The notes under the pieces were generated by a model that saw only the letters and a list, made by a program, of their open reading frames with translations, was not told the DNA's origin and did not search any database. The position numbers and the translations under genes are program-made. This document shows positions 5,499-23,893 of a DNA stretch of 64,000 nt, one piece after another. The stretch spans positions 16,678,001 through 16,742,000 of the forward strand of contig OZ059896.1 in assembly GCA_964057225.1 (NCBI GenBank), given 5' to 3'. Source of the stretch: Auanema rhodensis (lineage: Eukaryota; Animalia; Nematoda). Numbering within the stretch: position 1 is the first letter of the stretch; the number at the start of each line of letters is the position of its first letter.

Positions 5499-5807
5499 AT
5501 GATGAAGGTTGCCCTTATTTTGGTTCTTTGCTTTGTTGCTGTCCTCCAAATCGCTTCTGCTTATCCAAGCTATCACTCATGGGGATACGGACACCCATCT
5601 CCATACTACTATGCTAGACCAGGATACGGAGGGTTTGTCTACTTCTTTTCTTGAATTGAACATTTTCTGATATTCTAAGTATTCACTTCTTAATCATGAG
5701 TTTACAGATACGGATACAGAGGATACCCAGGATACGGATATCACCCAGTCGGAGGAGCTATTCGTGGAGCCGTCGCTGGAGCCCTTATCGGAGGAGTCCA
5801 TGGTTAA
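5499..5807 (+). CDS. Secreted Gly/Tyr-rich peptide (caenacin/nlp-29/fipr-like antimicrobial or cuticle peptide)
   Basis: Exons 5499-5632 and 5708-5807 give MMKVALILVLCFVAVLQIASA-YPSYHSWGYGHPSPYYYARPGYGGYGYRGYPGYGYHPVGGAIRGAVAGALIGGVHG*. TATATAAA at 5378, TTTTGCAG acceptor at 5493 and AATAAA near 5901 frame it. The ORF track missed it. Confidence 0.85.
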
Positions 5808-6077
5808 TTGCGTCCACTTTCCCAAGATTGAAAACCAATCTCTCATCTACATTACCGGTTTTCGTAGTCTGACAGTACATTCTGTTGTATAAATTACAAA
5901 AATAAATGATACAATTTAATTTTTCTTTTTTTTTCTGTCATGTAAAAAGAAAAAAAATTTATTTGACAATTAACATGATTAATTCTTTTTTTATTTGTTT
6001 AGTAATTTAGTATACAAATATATATAGTATGAACAAAGTCAAAAGATGTAAAAGAATTTCATTATGATTGTGACCCT

Positions 6078-8461
6078 TTAAATCCAAATATCAGAAGTAC
6101 AATCACCACCTGGATATCTCATTTCATGAGCCAAGTACGGACCACCTTCGACTGTTGTAAAGTCAATTAAAAAGTTTTCGTTCAATTGCATTCCGGTATC
6201 TGTGATATCTATTTGCAGAAGTTTAGCTCCTTTTCTGAAATAATTGACACTCAATGAACTACAAACTACATGTTTTGCAATATTACTTAGCCATATTTGG
6301 ATAGAATTGGTGATCCCAGGCAGCGTAAAGGGACGTGGTGACGTAGAGTCTCTTGCCGTCCAAGCTGAGTTGAAGCATCTGTGGTCCACCTTCAACTTTT
6401 TGATTTTTCACATAAAGAGCTTTAGGAATCTCCTGAAAAGTTATGAATTTTAGATTTTTCGTGGGAGGGAAATTCCAAGGGAAGCTTTTCTTGTTTTCTT
6501 TTTCTCGTACCGCATTTTCGGGATCGTTAATAATCTTGACGTCAGTCTCGTTATGAAGACTTCCTCCAATGAATACCTTGAACAACATTTCATTTTAAAA
6601 TTTACGGAGAAAAAAATTTAATTACCGAAGAAACAAAGACAGGTTTAGTTGGGTCAGAGATGTCGTACTGCCTGATATCTCCATGAAGCCAACAAGAGAA
6701 ATACAGGAAGCGATCATCCATAGAGATCAAAATATCAGTGACCAAGGCAGGCATTTTTGGAAGAATCCAGCCACTAACCTTAAGAAATGAATTAGTCTTA
6801 CTTCCATGATAAATCTAAAATATTACTTCTTTATCGGGAACATCAATTATTTCTGTAGCTTGGTATTCCTTGCTGCCCTACAATTTTGATAAATATTATA
6901 ATGATATCATTGCTATTCTCTTATTTACTGAAGTTTTTGGATGCAGATGATAAACAGCGGAGCCTAAGCCTGTTCCAACAAAAGCATCGGTACTATTGGG
7001 ATCATGTTTGAATCTAAAAAATATAAACAAGCTTAGAATTCGTTAAAAACAAAAAAATGATTACGGACCTGACTTCCAAGGGCAAAGCTCCATTTGGCAT
7101 TGGTAATTCGATCGATTGTAGTCGTTCATGTGTCGACCATTGAAACACATGAATGGAATGACCATATAAGCCTGCAAAATACTTAGAAAATTAAGAATTC
7201 TCAATGATCTTTTATATCTATTTGAAAACTTTAATTATTACATCTACATACCTTCAGCAACATGAAGAGGATTGAAATTTTTTTTGATCACATGAGGTGA
7301 TCCCCATTCGGTTGACATCATGACATCGTGTCTGGGCTGATACCAGAAGTCATAGTTGAAAGCAACTGAGTTAGGAGTCCATGTTCCGATCGGATCAAAT
7401 GTTTGACCATTGAGTAACAAGAAATTGCCCTTTGCTTTATCTTCAGCATCACCCAATGTACTAATCATAATCTGGCCATTAGCCAAACAATGAGAAGTAT
7501 GTGGGAATGTGACATCCAAAGCTTTCAATGCAGAAGGCTCAATTGTCTATAATATTGAAAAATATGTATTTAATGAAAGAACTCATTTCAAATTCTTTAT
7601 ACCTTCTCCAATTTAATATTATTTTGTTCTTCTACATTGACGACATAAATTCTGCTTGAATTTAGACAAGGTACAATTAGATGAGATCTGAGAAAATGAA
7701 ATTCATGTATTAATTTAATTGTGATAAAAATAATTTTGATGTATTTTCTGTGGTGTATGACGCGAAACTAAAGTAAGTTTCATCTACGGCTTTTCAAACT
7801 AAGGAAACTCTCAGATCTTGTATCAGATAGGCTAAAAGAGGAGGCATAACTGAACATCTGACTTGGAACCATTCCAAAAAGTTTGTCGAACCAATAACCA
7901 AGGTATGTTAGAACACATGTGGAACGTAGCAAAAATGAAGTTTAGAAAAATTTGGGGAGTTTCTAGTTGTTTTCAAAAATCAAAAAAAAGAAGAATTAAA
8001 ATTATCTAATTATTTGATATACTTTTACTTTATAATATATTTTTTTTTATTTTATTGGCCGCTAAAAAAAATGTTTCTTCTATAATAGAGGTGGCAACAA
8101 ATGCAGAAGAGCCCTAATTTTTTTATAAATTAAATTAATTTTTGAAATGAATGTAAATTTAAAGTACCTTCTCTTCTCGGGATTATCGTAGCAAGAAGAA
8201 CAAGCATTCCAACCGGTATGATGAATTTCATCTCCTTGATGTGGGAGGATAATCTTGGACACAATCTAAAGAGGTAGTTAAGAAGTTAACATTAACATGT
8301 CATACTTTACAATAATCTGGACTCTCAGGATTTACATTAACCGTAGCAACCATATCATGACCGCCTTGAGCATGTGGACATGTTACGAACAACACTTCTT
8401 CACGTCGAGACTTTGTGATAGCCTCGATAGGGCTGACATATCCAGGTCCACAACACGGCAT
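6078..8461 (-). CDS. semo-1: Selenium-binding protein SBP56 / methanethiol oxidase (SELENBP1 family), multi-exon
   Basis: N-terminal [14 protein letters not shown], plus [60 protein letters not shown] and C-terminal [18 protein letters not shown]. Family is certain. Orthology to semo-1 versus its paralog is not resolved. Confidence 0.93.
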
Positions 8462-14829: not shown

Positions 14830-15427
14830 CTGTCAAAGTTGATCATATTTTATTTATTTTACATAAGAAGTATAAAGCTAATTTGTTCAATTACAATTGT
14901 AATTTATTGTGTTGTTCATAGAGAAAGGTTACCATACTCAAAATATATTTTATTATGATTTTAGAAATTTGGAGAAATCCTATTCGAACTGATCGATCAA
15001 TTCTACACTAGTTATACGAGGGTTGATATGTACTCGGATATGATCCTTTGTTCTTTTGTTAAGAAGAATGTTTCGAAGATGAGGAAAATTATTAAGAAGA
15101 GGATACAGAGGAACAACGAGCTCTCTCTCAACAAACTAAATTTGAGCATCAATATTTCAAGAAGGAGAGTTCAGAGGATATTCAAAAATGAAATTGAGCT
15201 TCGCAGTTATTGTATAACTCGCTCACAGCATTTGACTGAAAGTGGCATGAAGAATAGGCTGGAAAAGGCGAAGAAACTGCTTCAGGAGATCAGCAATGTG
15301 TTGATCGTCAATAAAATTTAGTGGTAATTTATTTATTTTTGAACAACTGATGATTGAAATTATTTGCGAACACTAGTATAGGATTGAGGGATTATAATAC
15401 CACTTTTGACATTTTGCTCTTTTGAAC

Positions 15428-16865
15428 ATAATAATCTTCCCTACGTATAAAATAATCAATGCAATCATAATTGAATTGCAACATTCTCAACTCAGAATCA
15501 TCGTACACACTTCATGTAATTTGAATTGGTATGTTTTGCTTAACCTTTTTCGTTTTCTTAACCACTTCATATGTTCCATCATATTCTTCAGCATCATAGT
15601 AAAAATAATCATTTTTAGCTCTATTGAACTGTATTTCATTACTCATTTTCACCTTTCTATGTTTATTCTTATTCATACCAGTTACTCCAAAGGCAGAATT
15701 TCCGACTAATTTAGCTCCTTCAGAAATAATAGCGTACTTTTGGTCAACATCTCCTTCACGTCTTTCATCAGATACCCAATTCATAAAATCTTTAAAAATT
15801 CTTCCTCGTTTAGCTTATATGACGCCATCTAATTTCGTAACAATGCAACCATGTTCCAATATCCACCTCAATCTTGTAGATTTAATAAAAAATTTTTTCA
15901 GCTTTCAAAGTTGTAACAAGCTTTTTCCTTTTAGAAGGTTTTCTATCCAACGATTTTATCTTCTTTATCCAACAACTTTATTAGTATATTCACCACAAAC
16001 ACCTTTCATCATACTCTTTATATACTAATATAGGACATAATTCACCAAAATAATCCCATTTATTTTCTGGCACTTCTCTATCTACTTCTAAAAATCCGCA
16101 AAATGGGGATGTATTACTCATAAACCTTTTTTGATAAATTGAAAAATCATTATTTTCTTCAAAATACAGATTTACACAAGGCATTTCTTCACCAAGACAC
16201 CATAAATATAATGCATTAGCATCAAATCCAACTATTTTTTTTGATAATTTTACCTTCTTTATCGTAATACCATTCTTTTTTCCCTAGGTCGTAGTGTACT
16301 TTAGTAATTTGTGTTTTATCTTTTTCATGATATTTATGAAATACTATTGAAGCTCCACCAGTTATATTACTCTTAAATTTATAAAATGCTTCTTTGTTTT
16401 CTTCTCCAAATAACCAGATCATAGGATGATCTTTTCCCCATCTTTATAGAGCTTTATGTCTGTAAAACTCTTTGATTAATTTCTTGTATCTTGCTCTATT
16501 GCAAGTGATACAACATGCAACACAATTATCTTTTGTATAACTCTTGGAACAATCAAGTCAATCTAGTGACAAAGTATCTTCCTTCAAACAAAACAAACAA
16601 TAGACACATTTATTATTTTCTATTTTCGAGATGTCAACGATGACTTCAACTTGTAAAATATAATCTGTCGATCTATTTGATTCCTTATCTTGCTTATAAT
16701 AGTTATAAATTCTTTTTTCAAGAATATATTTGTGAGTATTTAAACTGTAAGAAGCTTTAGCAGATCTTTTCTTTAGGTATTCTTCAAAACCTTGAATTTG
16801 GAATTGATATAAAATCACTCAATCCTGGTAGAGAAACTGCATCTTTATACATATCTAACTTGAAA
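15428..16865 (-). pseudogene. Protein-primed family-B DNA polymerase fragment (Maverick/Polinton type) with an internal HNH-like segment
   Basis: Collinear motifs across frameshifts and stops: LDMYKDAVSLPGLS, CVYC...LSLD*LDCSKSYTKDNCVACCITCN, NITGGASIVFHKYHE, VGFDANALYLWCLGEEMP (motif A), KLVGNSAFG (motif B), PIQIT*SVYDDSELRMLQFNYDCID. It is cut off at the TIR just before the expected DTDS motif C. No introns. Confidence 0.9.
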
Positions 16866-16908
16866 TAAACACAGTTTATTTTTATAATTCTCAATTTTAT
16901 GATTTTAG

Positions 16909-17353
16909 ATTGGTTATGCCAACGACATCGTACACTTGTCTTCCGGCGCGTTCTATTCACCAGCGATTTCAGTTTCTGCTGGAATTCATGGCCCTAACAT
17001 TCGATATATGGTGCCGCTTGTTTGCCAGCGTGCAGGTAGGAGTTTATGTGTGATAAATCAGCTGCATTAATTTTTTTTTGCAGGAAGGCCCGATTCAAAA
17101 GCCATCAACATTTGGTTTCTTGTCGATAGTGGTTCACCGTTCACTTGTTTATCGGTGAAGTCATTGGAAGCGTTACTAGGCTCGGAAAATGCCACGCTTA
17201 CCTTGTACAATCTTGCAATTCAGGTTTGTTTTCTCTTTTATGTGTTGTTTAAAATTATATGTTCAGGACGAGAAGAGCAGAATCGAGTGTCAAGTTTCTA
17301 AAGCACATTACCAAGAAGTCAACATTCTTGGGGCTGATTCCATGTTTGTCTAA
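16909..17353 (+). pseudogene. Three-exon retropepsin-like (clan AA) aspartic protease gene fragment, 5'-truncated
   Basis: Exons 16909-17035, 17084-17223 and 17267-17353 with GT-AG introns splice in frame to ...RYMVPLVCQRAGRPDSKAINIWFLVDSGSPFTCLSVKSLEALLG...YQEVNILGADSMFV*. The D-S-G catalytic motif and ILGxD motif are present. It begins at a splice acceptor and the upstream exon is absent. Confidence 0.8.
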
Positions 17354-18224
17354 CTTTGTCATTTATTCAGCATTATTTTTATAATATCATTTTTTAAAGA
17401 AATCAACATCCACTGATTTTTTAAAAAGTGTGAAAATGACATGAAAATAGAGCATTTAAATATAAAAATTGGAAATAAAAAATAAAATCAACATCTCAAC
17501 AAAAAATTGATTGAAAATGTATAAAAACTATTGGAAATAAGCACTTTTTAGTGCTTTTATTCACTCATTTCATACTTTTTTTTAAAAAGTGTTGTAAATG
17601 AGTTGATTCTCTGACATCAGAGAATGAAAAACGTTCGAAAGAGCAAAATGTCGAAAGTGGTATGATAATCCCTCAATCCTATAATAGTGCGAACATACTT
17701 ATGCGTCACCCTGTAGAAAAAAGAGTGTTCGACGTTTATCGCACAAGAATATATACATATGTCATGCTATCTTCTATTACTACATACAATCCTGTCTTAT
17801 ATTTGAATTTTACATCAACTATTCCACGTAAAGCGTGAAATTTTTACTGTTTGTTTCATTTTAAATAAATAGGAACGTATGAATCGGTTGCATTATAAAG
17901 TTAATAACACTTAATATTACGTAAACGAATGTTCAATTGAATTATCAAACGCTTGAATCATGCTTTCATCTTTATTGCATTTTGAACTAAAATTAGCAGA
18001 AAATAAAAATAAATTGATATAAGTAGAATGAAGTTCCTTAAATGCCGGTTGCATTCATCATATTCTAATAGATGTCTTTAACCATCTTATTATCTAGTAA
18101 AAAGTGATGAAGTGATCATATTGATATAGAAATTAAAACTCAAATTTTCTCAACTATGAATTATATTTGAAAGTTAATGAGATGTTACTAAAGTTTCGAA
18201 ATATTATGAGACGACAGCAGTTTG

Positions 18225-22251: not shown

Positions 22252-23893
22252 ATGAACAAGGAAGAAGATAATATGACAACTATAGAATCGAATATAACTT
22301 CCAATCAGAATAATAAAATTGTGATAGCTTTATCAGAAAGACTAATATGTAGCTTTTTTCATATAACTGTAAGTTTAAATATATAAAACCTATTATATAA
22401 GATGTATAATTAACATTGAATTATAAATTAACTGTTTTAGATTCCCTTAATTGGTATCATAGTCACAGGGTTGATTGTGTTTTCCATATTTCGTTCCAAA
22501 TCAAAAATATCTCCATTCAATATTATATGTGTTTCTAAATCGGTTATTAACCTTTATGTATGCTGCTCATTTCTCTTTTTCCAAGCTCCAATGACACTTG
22601 GGTATGTTCGTAATTCTCTTAGGTCAACTGGAAATATATATTATAGAAATTTTATTTATGATAATTTTCTTTTAAATGATATTATATCTGCTATTCAAAA
22701 TAATTTCTATACTTATCTTCAATATGTCAATGTGGTTTTAGCTTTGAATCGTTTTACAGCCATTTTTTTTCCAACAATGTATAGTAGAATCTTTACAACA
22801 AAAACTGTTTTTATATTATTATCTATTGGACTTTTGGAAAGAATTAAGAATACATACGATCATTTTGCTTGTAATAATTAATTTATTATACTATATATAT
22901 TAATTATTATTTATTTTAAGATGAATGTATGTTTGTATATAATGGAGCAACTATGCAGTGGCAATTACTTGAAAATATTCCTGTCGGATGCAAAGAATGG
23001 TCAACCTTACTACCATTAAATCTTAGCTTCTCATTCTTTGTTGCTAGCTTAACACTAAATATTCCTACATTCATACGAGTATTTCTATTTTATGTATGTT
23101 TATGATATCATGATAAATTATCAAAAATTATATTTTAGATAATGCAACAGGGCACCACTCAAGGAGGATCAGTTGGTAAAAATAGTAAGCTATTCCTTCA
23201 GGTAATAACAAACCTTTTTCTGATTTTTATCATGTACTCAAATAACTATATTTCAATTAATTCTCTATTCAGACTGTTTTACAAGATTTCACATTCACAA
23301 TGGATATGATATTCATGAATTATTTAAGTGACATGTCTGATAATACTTTATGGTCTTTCTTTTGCTATACTATATCTGGTACACTTGTTCATGTACTTGA
23401 TGGGTAAATAATATATATATCTTCTTTCAATAAATACGTGGCCATACAATTCCTTGTCAAAAAATTCAAAAAAAAAAAAAAAAAACAGTTGAAAGAGAAA
23501 AAAAATTGAATATATTGTCTCCCCCTCCCTCGATCTTGATCACTTTCTCTCATCTCATTTCCAAATTTTTATTCCGTTCCTGAAAAATAATTTAGATTTA
23601 GAATCAAAAATATATTTTTAATTTTTTTAAATTCTAGTCGATGGCCACATATTTGTTGACACATCTAATATTATCATTATTATAAGATGTTTAAGAACTT
23701 TTTTCATTTTTTATGTTTTCAGAATACTAACTTTGATTTTTCAACCATGGATAGTATCTCCAATTTGCAAATCCAAACGATCAGAACAAAGAGCAACAAT
23801 AATTAAAGTAATAACTTGATTTTAATTTTATGAATAGTTATAAAATGTTTTTTTAATTTTATGATTTTTTTTCAGAGCACTTCAACTCAATAG
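22252..23893 (+). CDS. Serpentine chemoreceptor, srx-type (copy 2, tandem paralog)
   Basis: FQAPMTL, LALNRFTAIFFP, LFLQTVLQDFTFTMD and LVHVLDGILTL. Most intron positions are shared with copy 1. Confidence 0.85.
23427..23659. mobile_element. Possible old MITE remnant in an srx intron
   Basis: TCAATAAATACGTGGCCAT ... ATGGCCACATATTTGTTGA, a 17/19 inverted match that enlarges an intron which is short in the paralog. No clear TSD. Confidence 0.4.

What the first reader, a model, noticed from the sequence alone, without database searches (positions are those of the whole stretch)
15371..17689. Pack-type CACTA/Chapaev-like element carrying a Maverick polymerase fragment and an intron-containing protease fragment
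Seen: 57-bp TIRs (53/57) with CACTA...TAGTG ends, an exact 4-bp TSD (CGAA), no transposase, and an interior made of a decayed pPolB fragment (minus strand) abutting a three-exon aspartic protease fragment (plus strand). Known: CAC...GTG ends with 4-bp TSDs typify Chapaev (CMC) transposons, Pack-type gene capture is mainly described in plants, and nematode Mavericks carry and horizontally move cargo genes. Inference: a cut-and-paste element has captured Maverick DNA, possibly with its cargo, and moved it as a unit, which would be a relay route between two transposon classes.
Basis: partly seen in the sequence, partly recalled or inferred. Interest (0 to 1): 0.8.

Follow-up and report, generated by a model that had tools for sequence, protein, structure and literature searches.

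The report
Shrunken Maverick relic with passenger gene
A 2.3-kb insertion in a nematode genome, bounded by inverted repeats, holds a decayed piece of a Maverick virus-like polymerase gene and part of a retropepsin-like worm gene; it is more likely the shrunken remains of a Maverick and its passenger gene than a different kind of transposon that captured Maverick DNA.

Summary
There are 57-nt inverted repeats (53/57), no transposase, a decayed protein-primed polymerase (pPolB) fragment on the minus strand, and three intact exons of a retropepsin-like gene on the plus strand. One correction: the flanking direct repeat is 8 bp (TGCGAACA), not 4. It overlaps the inverted repeat, so the target duplication may be 4, 6 or 8 bp, and the CAC...GTG ends are only one possible reading.

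A relative in Caenorhabditis angaria changes the interpretation. There, homologous terminal repeats and the same right subterminal region enclose the complete five-exon gene, inside an rpb-2 intron, with no pPolB. The three outer bases differ there on both sides. So the gene belongs to this repeat family and was not captured together with the pPolB.

Both genes point their 3' ends at the terminal repeats. This is the layout published for nematode Mavericks (pPolB at one end, intron-bearing cargo at the other). My best reading (0.5) is a heavily deleted Maverick, or a shortened derivative of one. A relay from Maverick cargo to a cut-and-paste element is already published (a MULE in C. briggsae). 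Copy number could not be tested. Interest is moderate.

The parts
15365..15372 (.). Left copy of the flanking direct repeat TGCGAACA.
   Evidence: Read. The identical 8-mer lies at 17688-17695. It overlaps the inverted repeat by 2 nt.
15371..15427 (+). Left terminal inverted repeat, 57 nt.
   Evidence: It is homologous to both ends of the C. angaria unit, L001 5693-5725 and 7196-7250.
15428..16818 (-). Fragment of a protein-primed family B DNA polymerase gene (Maverick/Polinton type). It is truncated at both ends and broken by at least five in-frame stops and at least two frameshifts. Its C-terminal side faces the left repeat.
   Evidence: Relatives match Pfam PF03175. A KxxxNSxxG-type motif B is present. 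No motif C is seen before the repeat.
16811..16826 (-). Third, internal copy of the repeat core (14 of 16 nt), in right-end orientation, at the junction between the two fragments.
   Evidence: I7, D7; expected 0.05 per 64 kb. An extended alignment adds little (3% of random segments score as high).
16884..17353 (+). Fragment of a retropepsin-like nematode gene. It holds the last 25 nt of intron 2, exon 3 (16909-17035), an intron, exon 4 (17084-17223), an intron, and exon 5 cut short (homology ends at 17344, followed by two foreign codons and a stop). The 114 retained codons have no stop or frameshift. The gene is truncated at both ends.
   Evidence: DNA identity to the C. angaria gene (L001 6351-6810) is 83%, introns included. 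Exon boundaries are shared with annotated orthologues. Fold.
17354..17632 (+). Right subterminal non-coding region, A+T-rich, with several small hairpins.
   Evidence: From about 17395 on it is homologous to L001 7009-7229 (68% over 284 nt including the repeat). Folding z-score is -4.0.
17633..17689 (-). Right terminal inverted repeat, 57 nt.
17688..17695 (.). Right copy of the flanking direct repeat TGCGAACA. CGAA lies at 17690-17693 and GCGAAC at 17689-17694.
   Evidence: Read.

Best explanation
The unit is one insertion, bounded by 57-nt inverted repeats and an exact duplication of the target. What lies between the repeats is what remains of the two ends of a nematode Maverick (Polinton).

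- **Left end:** a decayed, doubly truncated piece of the element's own protein-primed polymerase gene, with its 3' side facing the terminal repeat.
- **Right end:** exons 3 to 5 of an intron-bearing passenger ('cargo') gene, a conserved nematode retropepsin-like gene, with its 3' side facing the other terminal repeat, followed by about 280 nt of subterminal sequence.
- **Middle:** the integrase, capsid, ATPase and protease genes are gone.

Either a full element inserted here and shrank in place by deletions, or a shortened derivative was copied and inserted by the enzymes of complete elements. Today it can encode nothing functional.

**Shown:** the repeats, the duplication, the identity of both fragments, their orientation, and a related repeat-bounded unit carrying the whole gene in C. 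angaria.

**Inferred:** that the repeats are Maverick ends, and the order of the deletions.
For: 1. The pPolB identity is established.
2. The orientation matches the literature. Widen et al. [quoted passage not shown] Here both genes point outward at the repeats.
3. The flanking repeat can be read as 6 bp. This is the usual Maverick duplication: 6 bp in PMC8097293 and 5-8 bp in PMC10748475.
4. In C. angaria (L001) homologous repeats and the same right subterminal region enclose the complete gene inside an rpb-2 intron. So the gene travels with these repeats, as cargo would.
5. The left end of that unit reads AGTAGT, the (AGT)2 end motif reported for vertebrate Mavericks. The three bases that would make CAC...GTG are not conserved there.
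6. Orthologues in C. briggsae, C. sp. 36 and other nematodes sit in ordinary host contexts without these repeats. This fits a host gene taken up as cargo in one lineage.
7. A TIR-bounded unit that contains pPolB is most simply a Maverick remnant.
Against: - The inverted repeat is only 57 nt, against the 100-1500 nt quoted for Polintons.
- The ends in the window read ACTAGT / ACTATT or CACTA, not an AG-type motif.
- The pPolB piece stops before motif C, right at the inner edge of the repeat. That needs an extra deletion.
- The C. angaria unit holds no Maverick gene at all.
- The left repeat is short in both units, which suggests a small mobile ancestor rather than two independent decays.
- A third repeat core sits at the fragment junction, which fits nested cut-and-paste events better.
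- No full-length Maverick with these ends was compared, because that step was left out.
- Copy number in the source genome is unknown.
Confidence: 0.5

Rival explanations
1. This is a non-autonomous Chapaev/CMC-type cut-and-paste element (CAC...GTG ends, 4-bp duplication). Like a Pack element, it carries captured DNA: first the retropepsin-like gene, later a piece of a decayed Maverick polymerase gene. It would be moved by a transposase encoded elsewhere.
For: - CAC...GTG ends with a 3-4-bp duplication are the stated hallmarks of Chapaev (PMC4079192), and one reading of the ends fits them.
- The repeats are short, the unit is small and there is no transposase.
- Chapaev families exist in Caenorhabditis.
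- Both inner fragments are truncated at their junction, as in filler or capture events.
- A third repeat core lies at the junction.
Against: - The direct repeat is 8 bp, so the 4-bp reading needs four further chance matches between flank and element ends.
- In the C. angaria relative, five of the six bases that would form CAC...GTG differ, while the next 21 nt are well kept.
- The outward orientation of both genes would be a coincidence of about 1 in 4.
- Capture of Maverick DNA by such an element is a priori rare.
- No transposase or autonomous partner was seen in the window or in any fetched locus.
Confidence: 0.2
2. This is a non-autonomous cut-and-paste element of another superfamily with an 8-bp duplication (hAT, MULE, Merlin or P-like). 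Its ancestor carried the whole retropepsin-like gene, as in C. angaria. The left third was later replaced by polymerase DNA. This could have happened by gap repair that copied from a decayed Maverick, or by a nested insertion of a related element followed by movement from the inner left end to the outer right end.
For: - The exact repeat is 8 bp.
- Homology with the C. angaria unit ends one base outside TAG...CTA, which fits the 8-bp reading best.
- The window unit equals the right two thirds of the C. angaria unit plus foreign DNA on the left.
- An internal right-end-like repeat core lies exactly at the junction.
- There is a published precedent of a MULE that took up Maverick cargo.
Against: - The ends CTAG... 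do not match the usual end motifs of hAT, Merlin or P. This rests on my own knowledge and was not tested.
- No transposase is present.
- The internal core match is short, and an extended alignment is not significant.
- The gene orientation would again be a coincidence.
Confidence: 0.2
3. This is not an element. It is a chance inverted repeat or an assembly join of unrelated pieces.
For: Only one copy lies in the window. Junctions could not be checked against reads.
Against: - 53 of 57 nt are complementary, and there is an exact 8-bp flanking repeat.
- An independent genome, C. angaria, holds a homologous repeat-bounded unit with the same right subterminal region.
Confidence: 0.03

Closest known systems
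Nematode Mavericks/Polintons carrying cargo genes (Widen et al., bioRxiv 10.1101/2022.07.12.499685; Jeong et al., PMC10748475)
   Same: - A protein-primed polymerase gene sits at one end, with its 3' side at the terminal repeat.
- An intron-bearing non-viral gene sits at the other end, with its 3' side at the other repeat.
- The target duplication is compatible with 6 bp.
- The unit is pseudogenised, as most copies are.
   Different: - It is 2.3 kb instead of 13-25 kb, with no integrase, capsid, ATPase or protease gene.
- The inverted repeat is 57 nt rather than 100-1500 nt.
- The passenger is a retropepsin-like gene, not one of the wasp or krma families described as cargo.
- The ends were not compared with those of a full-length element.
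MULE-borne msft-1/tlpr-1 element of C. briggsae (same paper)
   Same: It is a TIR-bounded unit that moves a gene that had been Maverick cargo. This is a published link between Mavericks and a cut-and-paste element.
   Different: - That element has 870-bp TIRs, its own MULE transposase and intact genes.
- It contains no Maverick core-gene DNA.
- Here there is no transposase, and polymerase DNA itself lies inside the repeats.
Chapaev / CMC non-autonomous elements and Pack-type elements (Pack-MULE, Pack-CACTA)
   Same: - Short TIRs, no transposase, and internal gene fragments that keep their introns.
- One reading of the ends gives CAC...GTG with a 4-bp duplication.
   Different: - The duplication is ambiguous (4, 6 or 8 bp).
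- CAC...GTG is not conserved in the one relative found.
- No CMC transposase is linked to these ends.
- One of the 'captured' pieces is the hallmark gene of another mobile element, and it lies in that element's native orientation.
Retropepsin-like proteins (Rickettsia APRc, DDI1 RVP domain, retroviral proteases)
   Same: - The predicted fold of the C. angaria family member matches them (Foldseek probability 1.0, TM 0.5-0.6 by target length).
- A D-S/T-G motif is present in the window copy and in most family members.
   Different: - Sequence matches to the Pfam retropepsin models are below threshold.
- The Asp is not invariant in the family. It is Asn in the C. angaria protein.
- The proteins are about 174 aa, with a conserved N-terminal extension.
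- Protease activity is untested.

Membership tests
Maverick / Polinton | Protein-primed family B DNA polymerase gene | tested here: met
   Only a fragment is present. Its relatives pass PF03175, and the pieces are colinear on them. It is broken and truncated.
Maverick / Polinton | Retroviral-type integrase and capsid, ATPase and protease genes | tested here: not met
   None lies inside the unit, and no pPolB-like match or Pfam match to a mobile-element gene was found elsewhere in the window. This is expected for a deleted relic, but the unit is not a complete member.
Maverick / Polinton | Terminal inverted repeats of 100-1500 bp | tested here: not met
   Only 57 nt are inverted. The range is quoted from PMC10748475.
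Maverick / Polinton | Target duplication of 6 bp (5-8) | tested here: inconclusive
   The 8-bp direct repeat overlaps the inverted repeat. Readings of 4, 6 and 8 bp all fit.
Maverick / Polinton | Reiterated end motif such as (AGT)2...(ACT)2 | tested here: inconclusive
   The window ends read ACTAGT and, reverse-complemented, ACTATT. The left end of the C. angaria unit reads AGTAGT. The motif is documented for vertebrate elements only.
Maverick / Polinton | Nematode layout: pPolB 3' end at one TIR and intron-bearing cargo 3' end at the other | tested here: met
Maverick / Polinton | Same terminal sequence as full-length Mavericks of the same or a related genome | not tested
   This step was left out. 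Fetching virus-like elements of animals is barred.
Chapaev (CMC superfamily) | Invariable 5'-CAC...GTG-3' termini | tested here: inconclusive
   They are present in the window under one reading. They are not conserved in the C. angaria relative, which has GAG...TGC.
Chapaev (CMC superfamily) | 3-4-bp target duplication | tested here: inconclusive
   CGAA is exact, but the repeat runs to 8 bp.
Chapaev (CMC superfamily) | DDE transposase with CMC signature, in this copy or in an autonomous partner with the same ends | not testable with these tools
   There is none in the unit or the window. No tool searches nematode genomes by DNA.
Pack-type (gene-fragment-carrying non-autonomous TIR element) | TIRs plus duplication, no transposase, and internal fragments of genes that exist elsewhere with the same introns | tested here: met
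   The description fits in form whichever enzyme moved the unit. It does not show capture by a cut-and-paste element.
Pack-type (gene-fragment-carrying non-autonomous TIR element) | Parental gene at another locus of the same genome, and several copies with different flanks | not testable with these tools
   The source genome cannot be searched. One related unit with unrelated flanks was found in C. angaria.
Retropepsin-like aspartic protease fold | Retropepsin fold with a D-T/S-G active-site loop | tested here: met
   The AlphaFold2 model of P0033 has pLDDT 86. The top Foldseek hits are APRc, HTLV-1 protease and DDI1. DSG is present in window exon 4. Pfam scores are below cut-off.

The most novel reading that the evidence does not exclude
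The 57-nt repeats define a small non-autonomous element family of the C. angaria lineage. It ferries a conserved retropepsin-like gene to new loci: whole in an rpb-2 intron of C. angaria, partial here. In this copy it has also taken up Maverick polymerase DNA. That would be a second, independent link between Mavericks and small TIR elements, or the first described mobile 'mini-Maverick' with cargo in nematodes.
Probability: 0.25. Interest if true: 0.6.

Novelty: new member of a known kind. Interest (0 to 1): 0.4.

Why it matters
- If the repeats are Maverick ends, this adds a retropepsin-like gene to the short list of nematode Maverick cargo families.
- It also shows what a Maverick looks like after nearly everything but its ends has been deleted. 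That helps in annotating such relics, which otherwise look like Pack-type transposons.
- In C. angaria the only family member my search returned is the repeat-bounded copy, nested in an intron of rpb-2. A conserved gene may have been relocated, or replaced, through a mobile element.
- If the repeats instead belong to a cut-and-paste family, this would be a second case of traffic between Mavericks and such elements, after the published MULE case.

Tried and rejected
- **Pfam and PDB sequence searches with single open stretches of the pPolB fragment:** nothing usable. Identity came only from the word search.
- **Word search with exon 4 alone:** no candidates, because of the length limit. The large search then found the family.
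- **Exact look-up of the 97-aa open frame left of the insertion,** hoping for empty-site alleles or the species: not on record.
- **Scan of metagenome contigs for the repeat core:** 29 single matches, none extending beyond 22 nt, so all are chance. These loci were not used further.
- **Full-text search of papers for the terminal letters:** only primers and unrelated genomes.
- **Kapitonov and Jurka 2006:** not held. No supplement is held for Jeong et al..
- **Search for rpb-2 or other L001 flank coding sequence in the window:** none, so the two loci are not homologous.
- **Search for pPolB remnants next to family members in seven fetched host loci and three further contigs:** none.
- **Argument from the length of the flanking repeat:** I first thought it favoured 6 bp over 4 bp. 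Worked through, the same pre-insertion site gives the same sequence under each reading. It does not discriminate, so I dropped it.
- **Extended alignment of the inner junction with the right end:** not significant beyond the 16-nt core.
Full report
**What is there.** The window is nematode DNA.
- It is 31% G+C and holds an Srx chemoreceptor exon at 22441-22878.
- The introns in the feature are 43-48 nt long with TTTTCAG-like acceptors.
- A 20-nt end motif occurs only there in 64 kb, against a chance expectation of 0.01. No further copy of any part of the unit lies in the window.

**The flanking repeat.** CGAA is exact on both sides, but the direct repeat is longer: TGCGAACA at 15365-15372 and again at 17688-17695 (read).
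- The repeat overlaps the inverted repeat. The same sequence can therefore be parsed three ways:
  - a 4-bp duplication with ends CAC...GTG;
  - a 6-bp duplication with ends ACTAGT...;
  - an 8-bp duplication with ends CTAG....
- All three parsings give the same empty site. One copy cannot decide between them.
- An exact 8-mer at both junctions shows that the unit arrived as one piece.

**The polymerase fragment.** The minus strand from 15428 to 16818 is a chain of open stretches in three frames.
- Pfam and PDB sequence searches with single stretches found nothing.
- The word search with the longest stretch found five short relatives at 49-77% identity.
  - One passes the Pfam cut-off for DNA_pol_B_2 (PF03175). 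Two more match it just below the cut-off, as does a sixth relative, P0031, found through a cluster look-up.
  - The polymerase motif B (K...NS..G) is invariant in their alignment.
- Neighbouring stretches in other frames map colinearly on the same relatives.
- The gene piece is truncated at both ends. No motif C is seen before the left repeat, and it spans at most about 460 codons.
- It carries at least five in-frame stops and at least two frameshifts.
- In a nematode, this kind of polymerase points to a Maverick/Polinton. That is an inference from PMC10748475 and Widen et al.

**The protease fragment.** I searched the exons one by one by reference and did not join them.
- Exon 4 alone found 24 representatives in the large search. 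A profile search then found 32 proteins of about 174 aa. They come from many nematodes:
  - C. briggsae (CBG15215), C. angaria and C. sp. 36;
  - Aphelenchoides, Acrobeloides, Auanema, Halicephalobus, Diploscapter and Ditylenchus.
- The three window exons map contiguously on these proteins. On the closest one, C. angaria P0033, they cover residues 39-153 of 173, at 71, 85 and 88% identity.
- Their boundaries are exactly the exon 3/4/5 boundaries of the annotated genes in C. angaria, C. briggsae and C. sp. 36. The introns are therefore shared by relatives.
- The fragment lacks exons 1-2 and the last 20 codons. The 114 retained codons have no stop or frameshift.
- Pfam retropepsin models match only below threshold.
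- An AlphaFold2 model of P0033 (pLDDT 86) matches retropepsin-like proteases first: Rickettsia APRc, HTLV-1 protease and DDI1.
- The window copy keeps D-S-G. The C. angaria protein has Asn at that position, and the Asp is not invariant in the family.

**The relative that changes the picture.** I fetched the C. angaria gene locus as L001.
- The gene (6001-6873) lies between two gene calls on the opposite strand. Together these make up rpb-2: domains Rpb2_1-2 on one side and Rpb2_2-7 on the other. The gene is therefore nested in an rpb-2 intron.
- It is flanked by an inverted pair, 5693-5713 and 7230-7250 (21 nt, 95%), that is homologous to the window repeats.
- Three stretches of the window unit match L001:

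| Window | L001 | Identity |
|---|---|---|
| 16884-17344 (exons and introns) | 6351-6810 | 83% |
| 17407-17686 (subterminal region and right repeat) | 7009-7250 | 68% |
| left repeat | both L001 ends | 71-75% |

- The same repeat family therefore encloses the complete gene, with its native upstream region and without any polymerase DNA.
- The window unit equals the right two thirds of such a unit, with the left third replaced by the polymerase piece and a further loss at the 3' end of the gene.
- The wider flanks of the two units share no coding sequence, so these are different insertion sites.
- Orthologues in C. briggsae, C. sp. 36, Aphelenchoides besseyi and three further contigs have no such repeats.
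- Homology between the window and L001 ends at TAGTATAGG and CCTATA(A/C)TA. The three outer bases that would give CAC...GTG are GAG and TGC in L001.
- With those bases, the L001 left end reads AGTAGT.

**Selection.** Between the window fragment and the C. angaria gene, exon differences fall 15, 8 and 37 on codon positions 1, 2 and 3. Most of the divergence therefore happened under purifying selection, and the truncation is young relative to the split of the two copies. Introns are more alike (99/114) than exons (285/345), which I cannot explain.

**Interpretation.** Widen et al. describe nematode Mavericks with an intron-bearing cargo region next to one TIR. They also describe a circular copy in which one TIR connects the 3' end of pPolB with the 3' end of the cargo gene.
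- That is the arrangement here. The polymerase piece runs toward the left repeat, and the retropepsin-like gene runs toward the right repeat.
- Three more points fit Maverick ends: a duplication compatible with 6 bp, the AGTAGT end in C. angaria (one search gives the motif for vertebrate elements), and the fact that the gene travels with these repeats.
- I take the unit to be a heavily deleted Maverick, or a copy of a shortened derivative, with part of its cargo (confidence 0.5).
- Several points count against this:
  - the 57-nt repeat is short;
  - the ends in the window are not of the AG type;
  - the polymerase is cut right at the edge of the repeat;
  - the C. angaria unit has no Maverick gene;
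  - the left repeat is short in both units;
  - a third repeat core lies at the inner junction.
- The hallmarks of Chapaev are CAC...GTG ends and a 3-4-bp duplication (PMC4079192). They are met only under one reading.

**Novelty.** The idea of a relay between Mavericks and cut-and-paste elements is published: a C. briggsae MULE captured Maverick cargo. What may be new is the retropepsin-like gene as cargo, and the repeat-bounded whole gene in the rpb-2 intron of C. angaria.

**Limits.**
- No tool searches nematode genomes by DNA. Copy number, an autonomous partner and empty sites are therefore untested.
- The source species is unknown. The closest available relative is C. angaria.

- To search the polymerase pieces apart, my script printed the bounds and translations of the open stretches. 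The tool output does the same.
- I counted the breaks from those bounds.
- These implicitly mark where breaks lie.

Noticed in passing
L001:5527-7315 (C. angaria GCA_947459285.1, CANHGI010000003.1): The annotation splits rpb-2 into two gene calls. One is fused to an enoyl-CoA hydratase gene. The split occurs around the repeat-bounded unit that holds the 173-aa retropepsin-like gene on the opposite strand. This is the only C. angaria family member my search returned.
   Followed up: partly
L033:1568-7052 (C. sp. 36); L034:1-4590 (Aphelenchoides besseyi; second gene copy fetched as L035): In C. sp. 36, two family genes sit head to head in the arms of a large, nearly perfect inverted duplication (2.65-kb arms, 99.1%). 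Aphelenchoides besseyi has two identical gene copies in opposite orientation about 6 kb apart, on either side of a 4.6-kb near-perfect palindrome (99.3%). A tyrosine-recombinase (Phage_integrase) gene lies 4 kb from the C. sp. 36 pair.
   Followed up: partly
window:15314-15373 versus L001:5633-5692: The 60 nt left of the insertion resemble the 60 nt left of the C. angaria unit (31/60 ungapped, anchored at the repeat; about 2 in 10,000 random positions do as well). The right flanks are unrelated. This could be target preference, a longer old left end, or chance. It is unexplained.
   Followed up: partly
window:15028-15321 (+): A 97-aa open frame ends 49 nt before the insertion. By eye its sequence looks like the N-terminal DNA-binding part of a Tc1/mariner-type transposase. 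Pfam gave no match, and the exact protein is not on record.
   Followed up: partly
P0033 residue in the D-T/S-G loop; alignment A8: The presumed catalytic Asp of the retropepsin-like family is Asn in C. angaria and varies in several other members. Arg70, Trp91, Thr101, Gly113 and Gln127 are invariant. The family may not be an active protease in every species.
   Followed up: no
P0016 / P0030 (Ditylenchus destructor): Two annotated proteins fuse the retropepsin-like domain to short pieces of Hsp70 or an HSP90-like ATPase. These are either mis-joined gene models or chimeric loci.
   Followed up: no
window, open stretches of 85 aa or more; Srx at 22441-22878: Other genes in the window include four open stretches matching the 56-kDa selenium-binding protein, one voltage-gated chloride channel, one MgtE-like transporter and one Srx chemoreceptor. 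No Maverick core gene and no transposase domain was found outside the unit.
   Followed up: no
window:17354-17632: The right subterminal region folds into several small hairpins (z = -4.0). Some of them are kept in the C. angaria unit. Weak matches to a stretch of this region also occur kilobases from the gene in C. briggsae (L002) and, for the equivalent C. angaria stretch, in L037.
   Followed up: no
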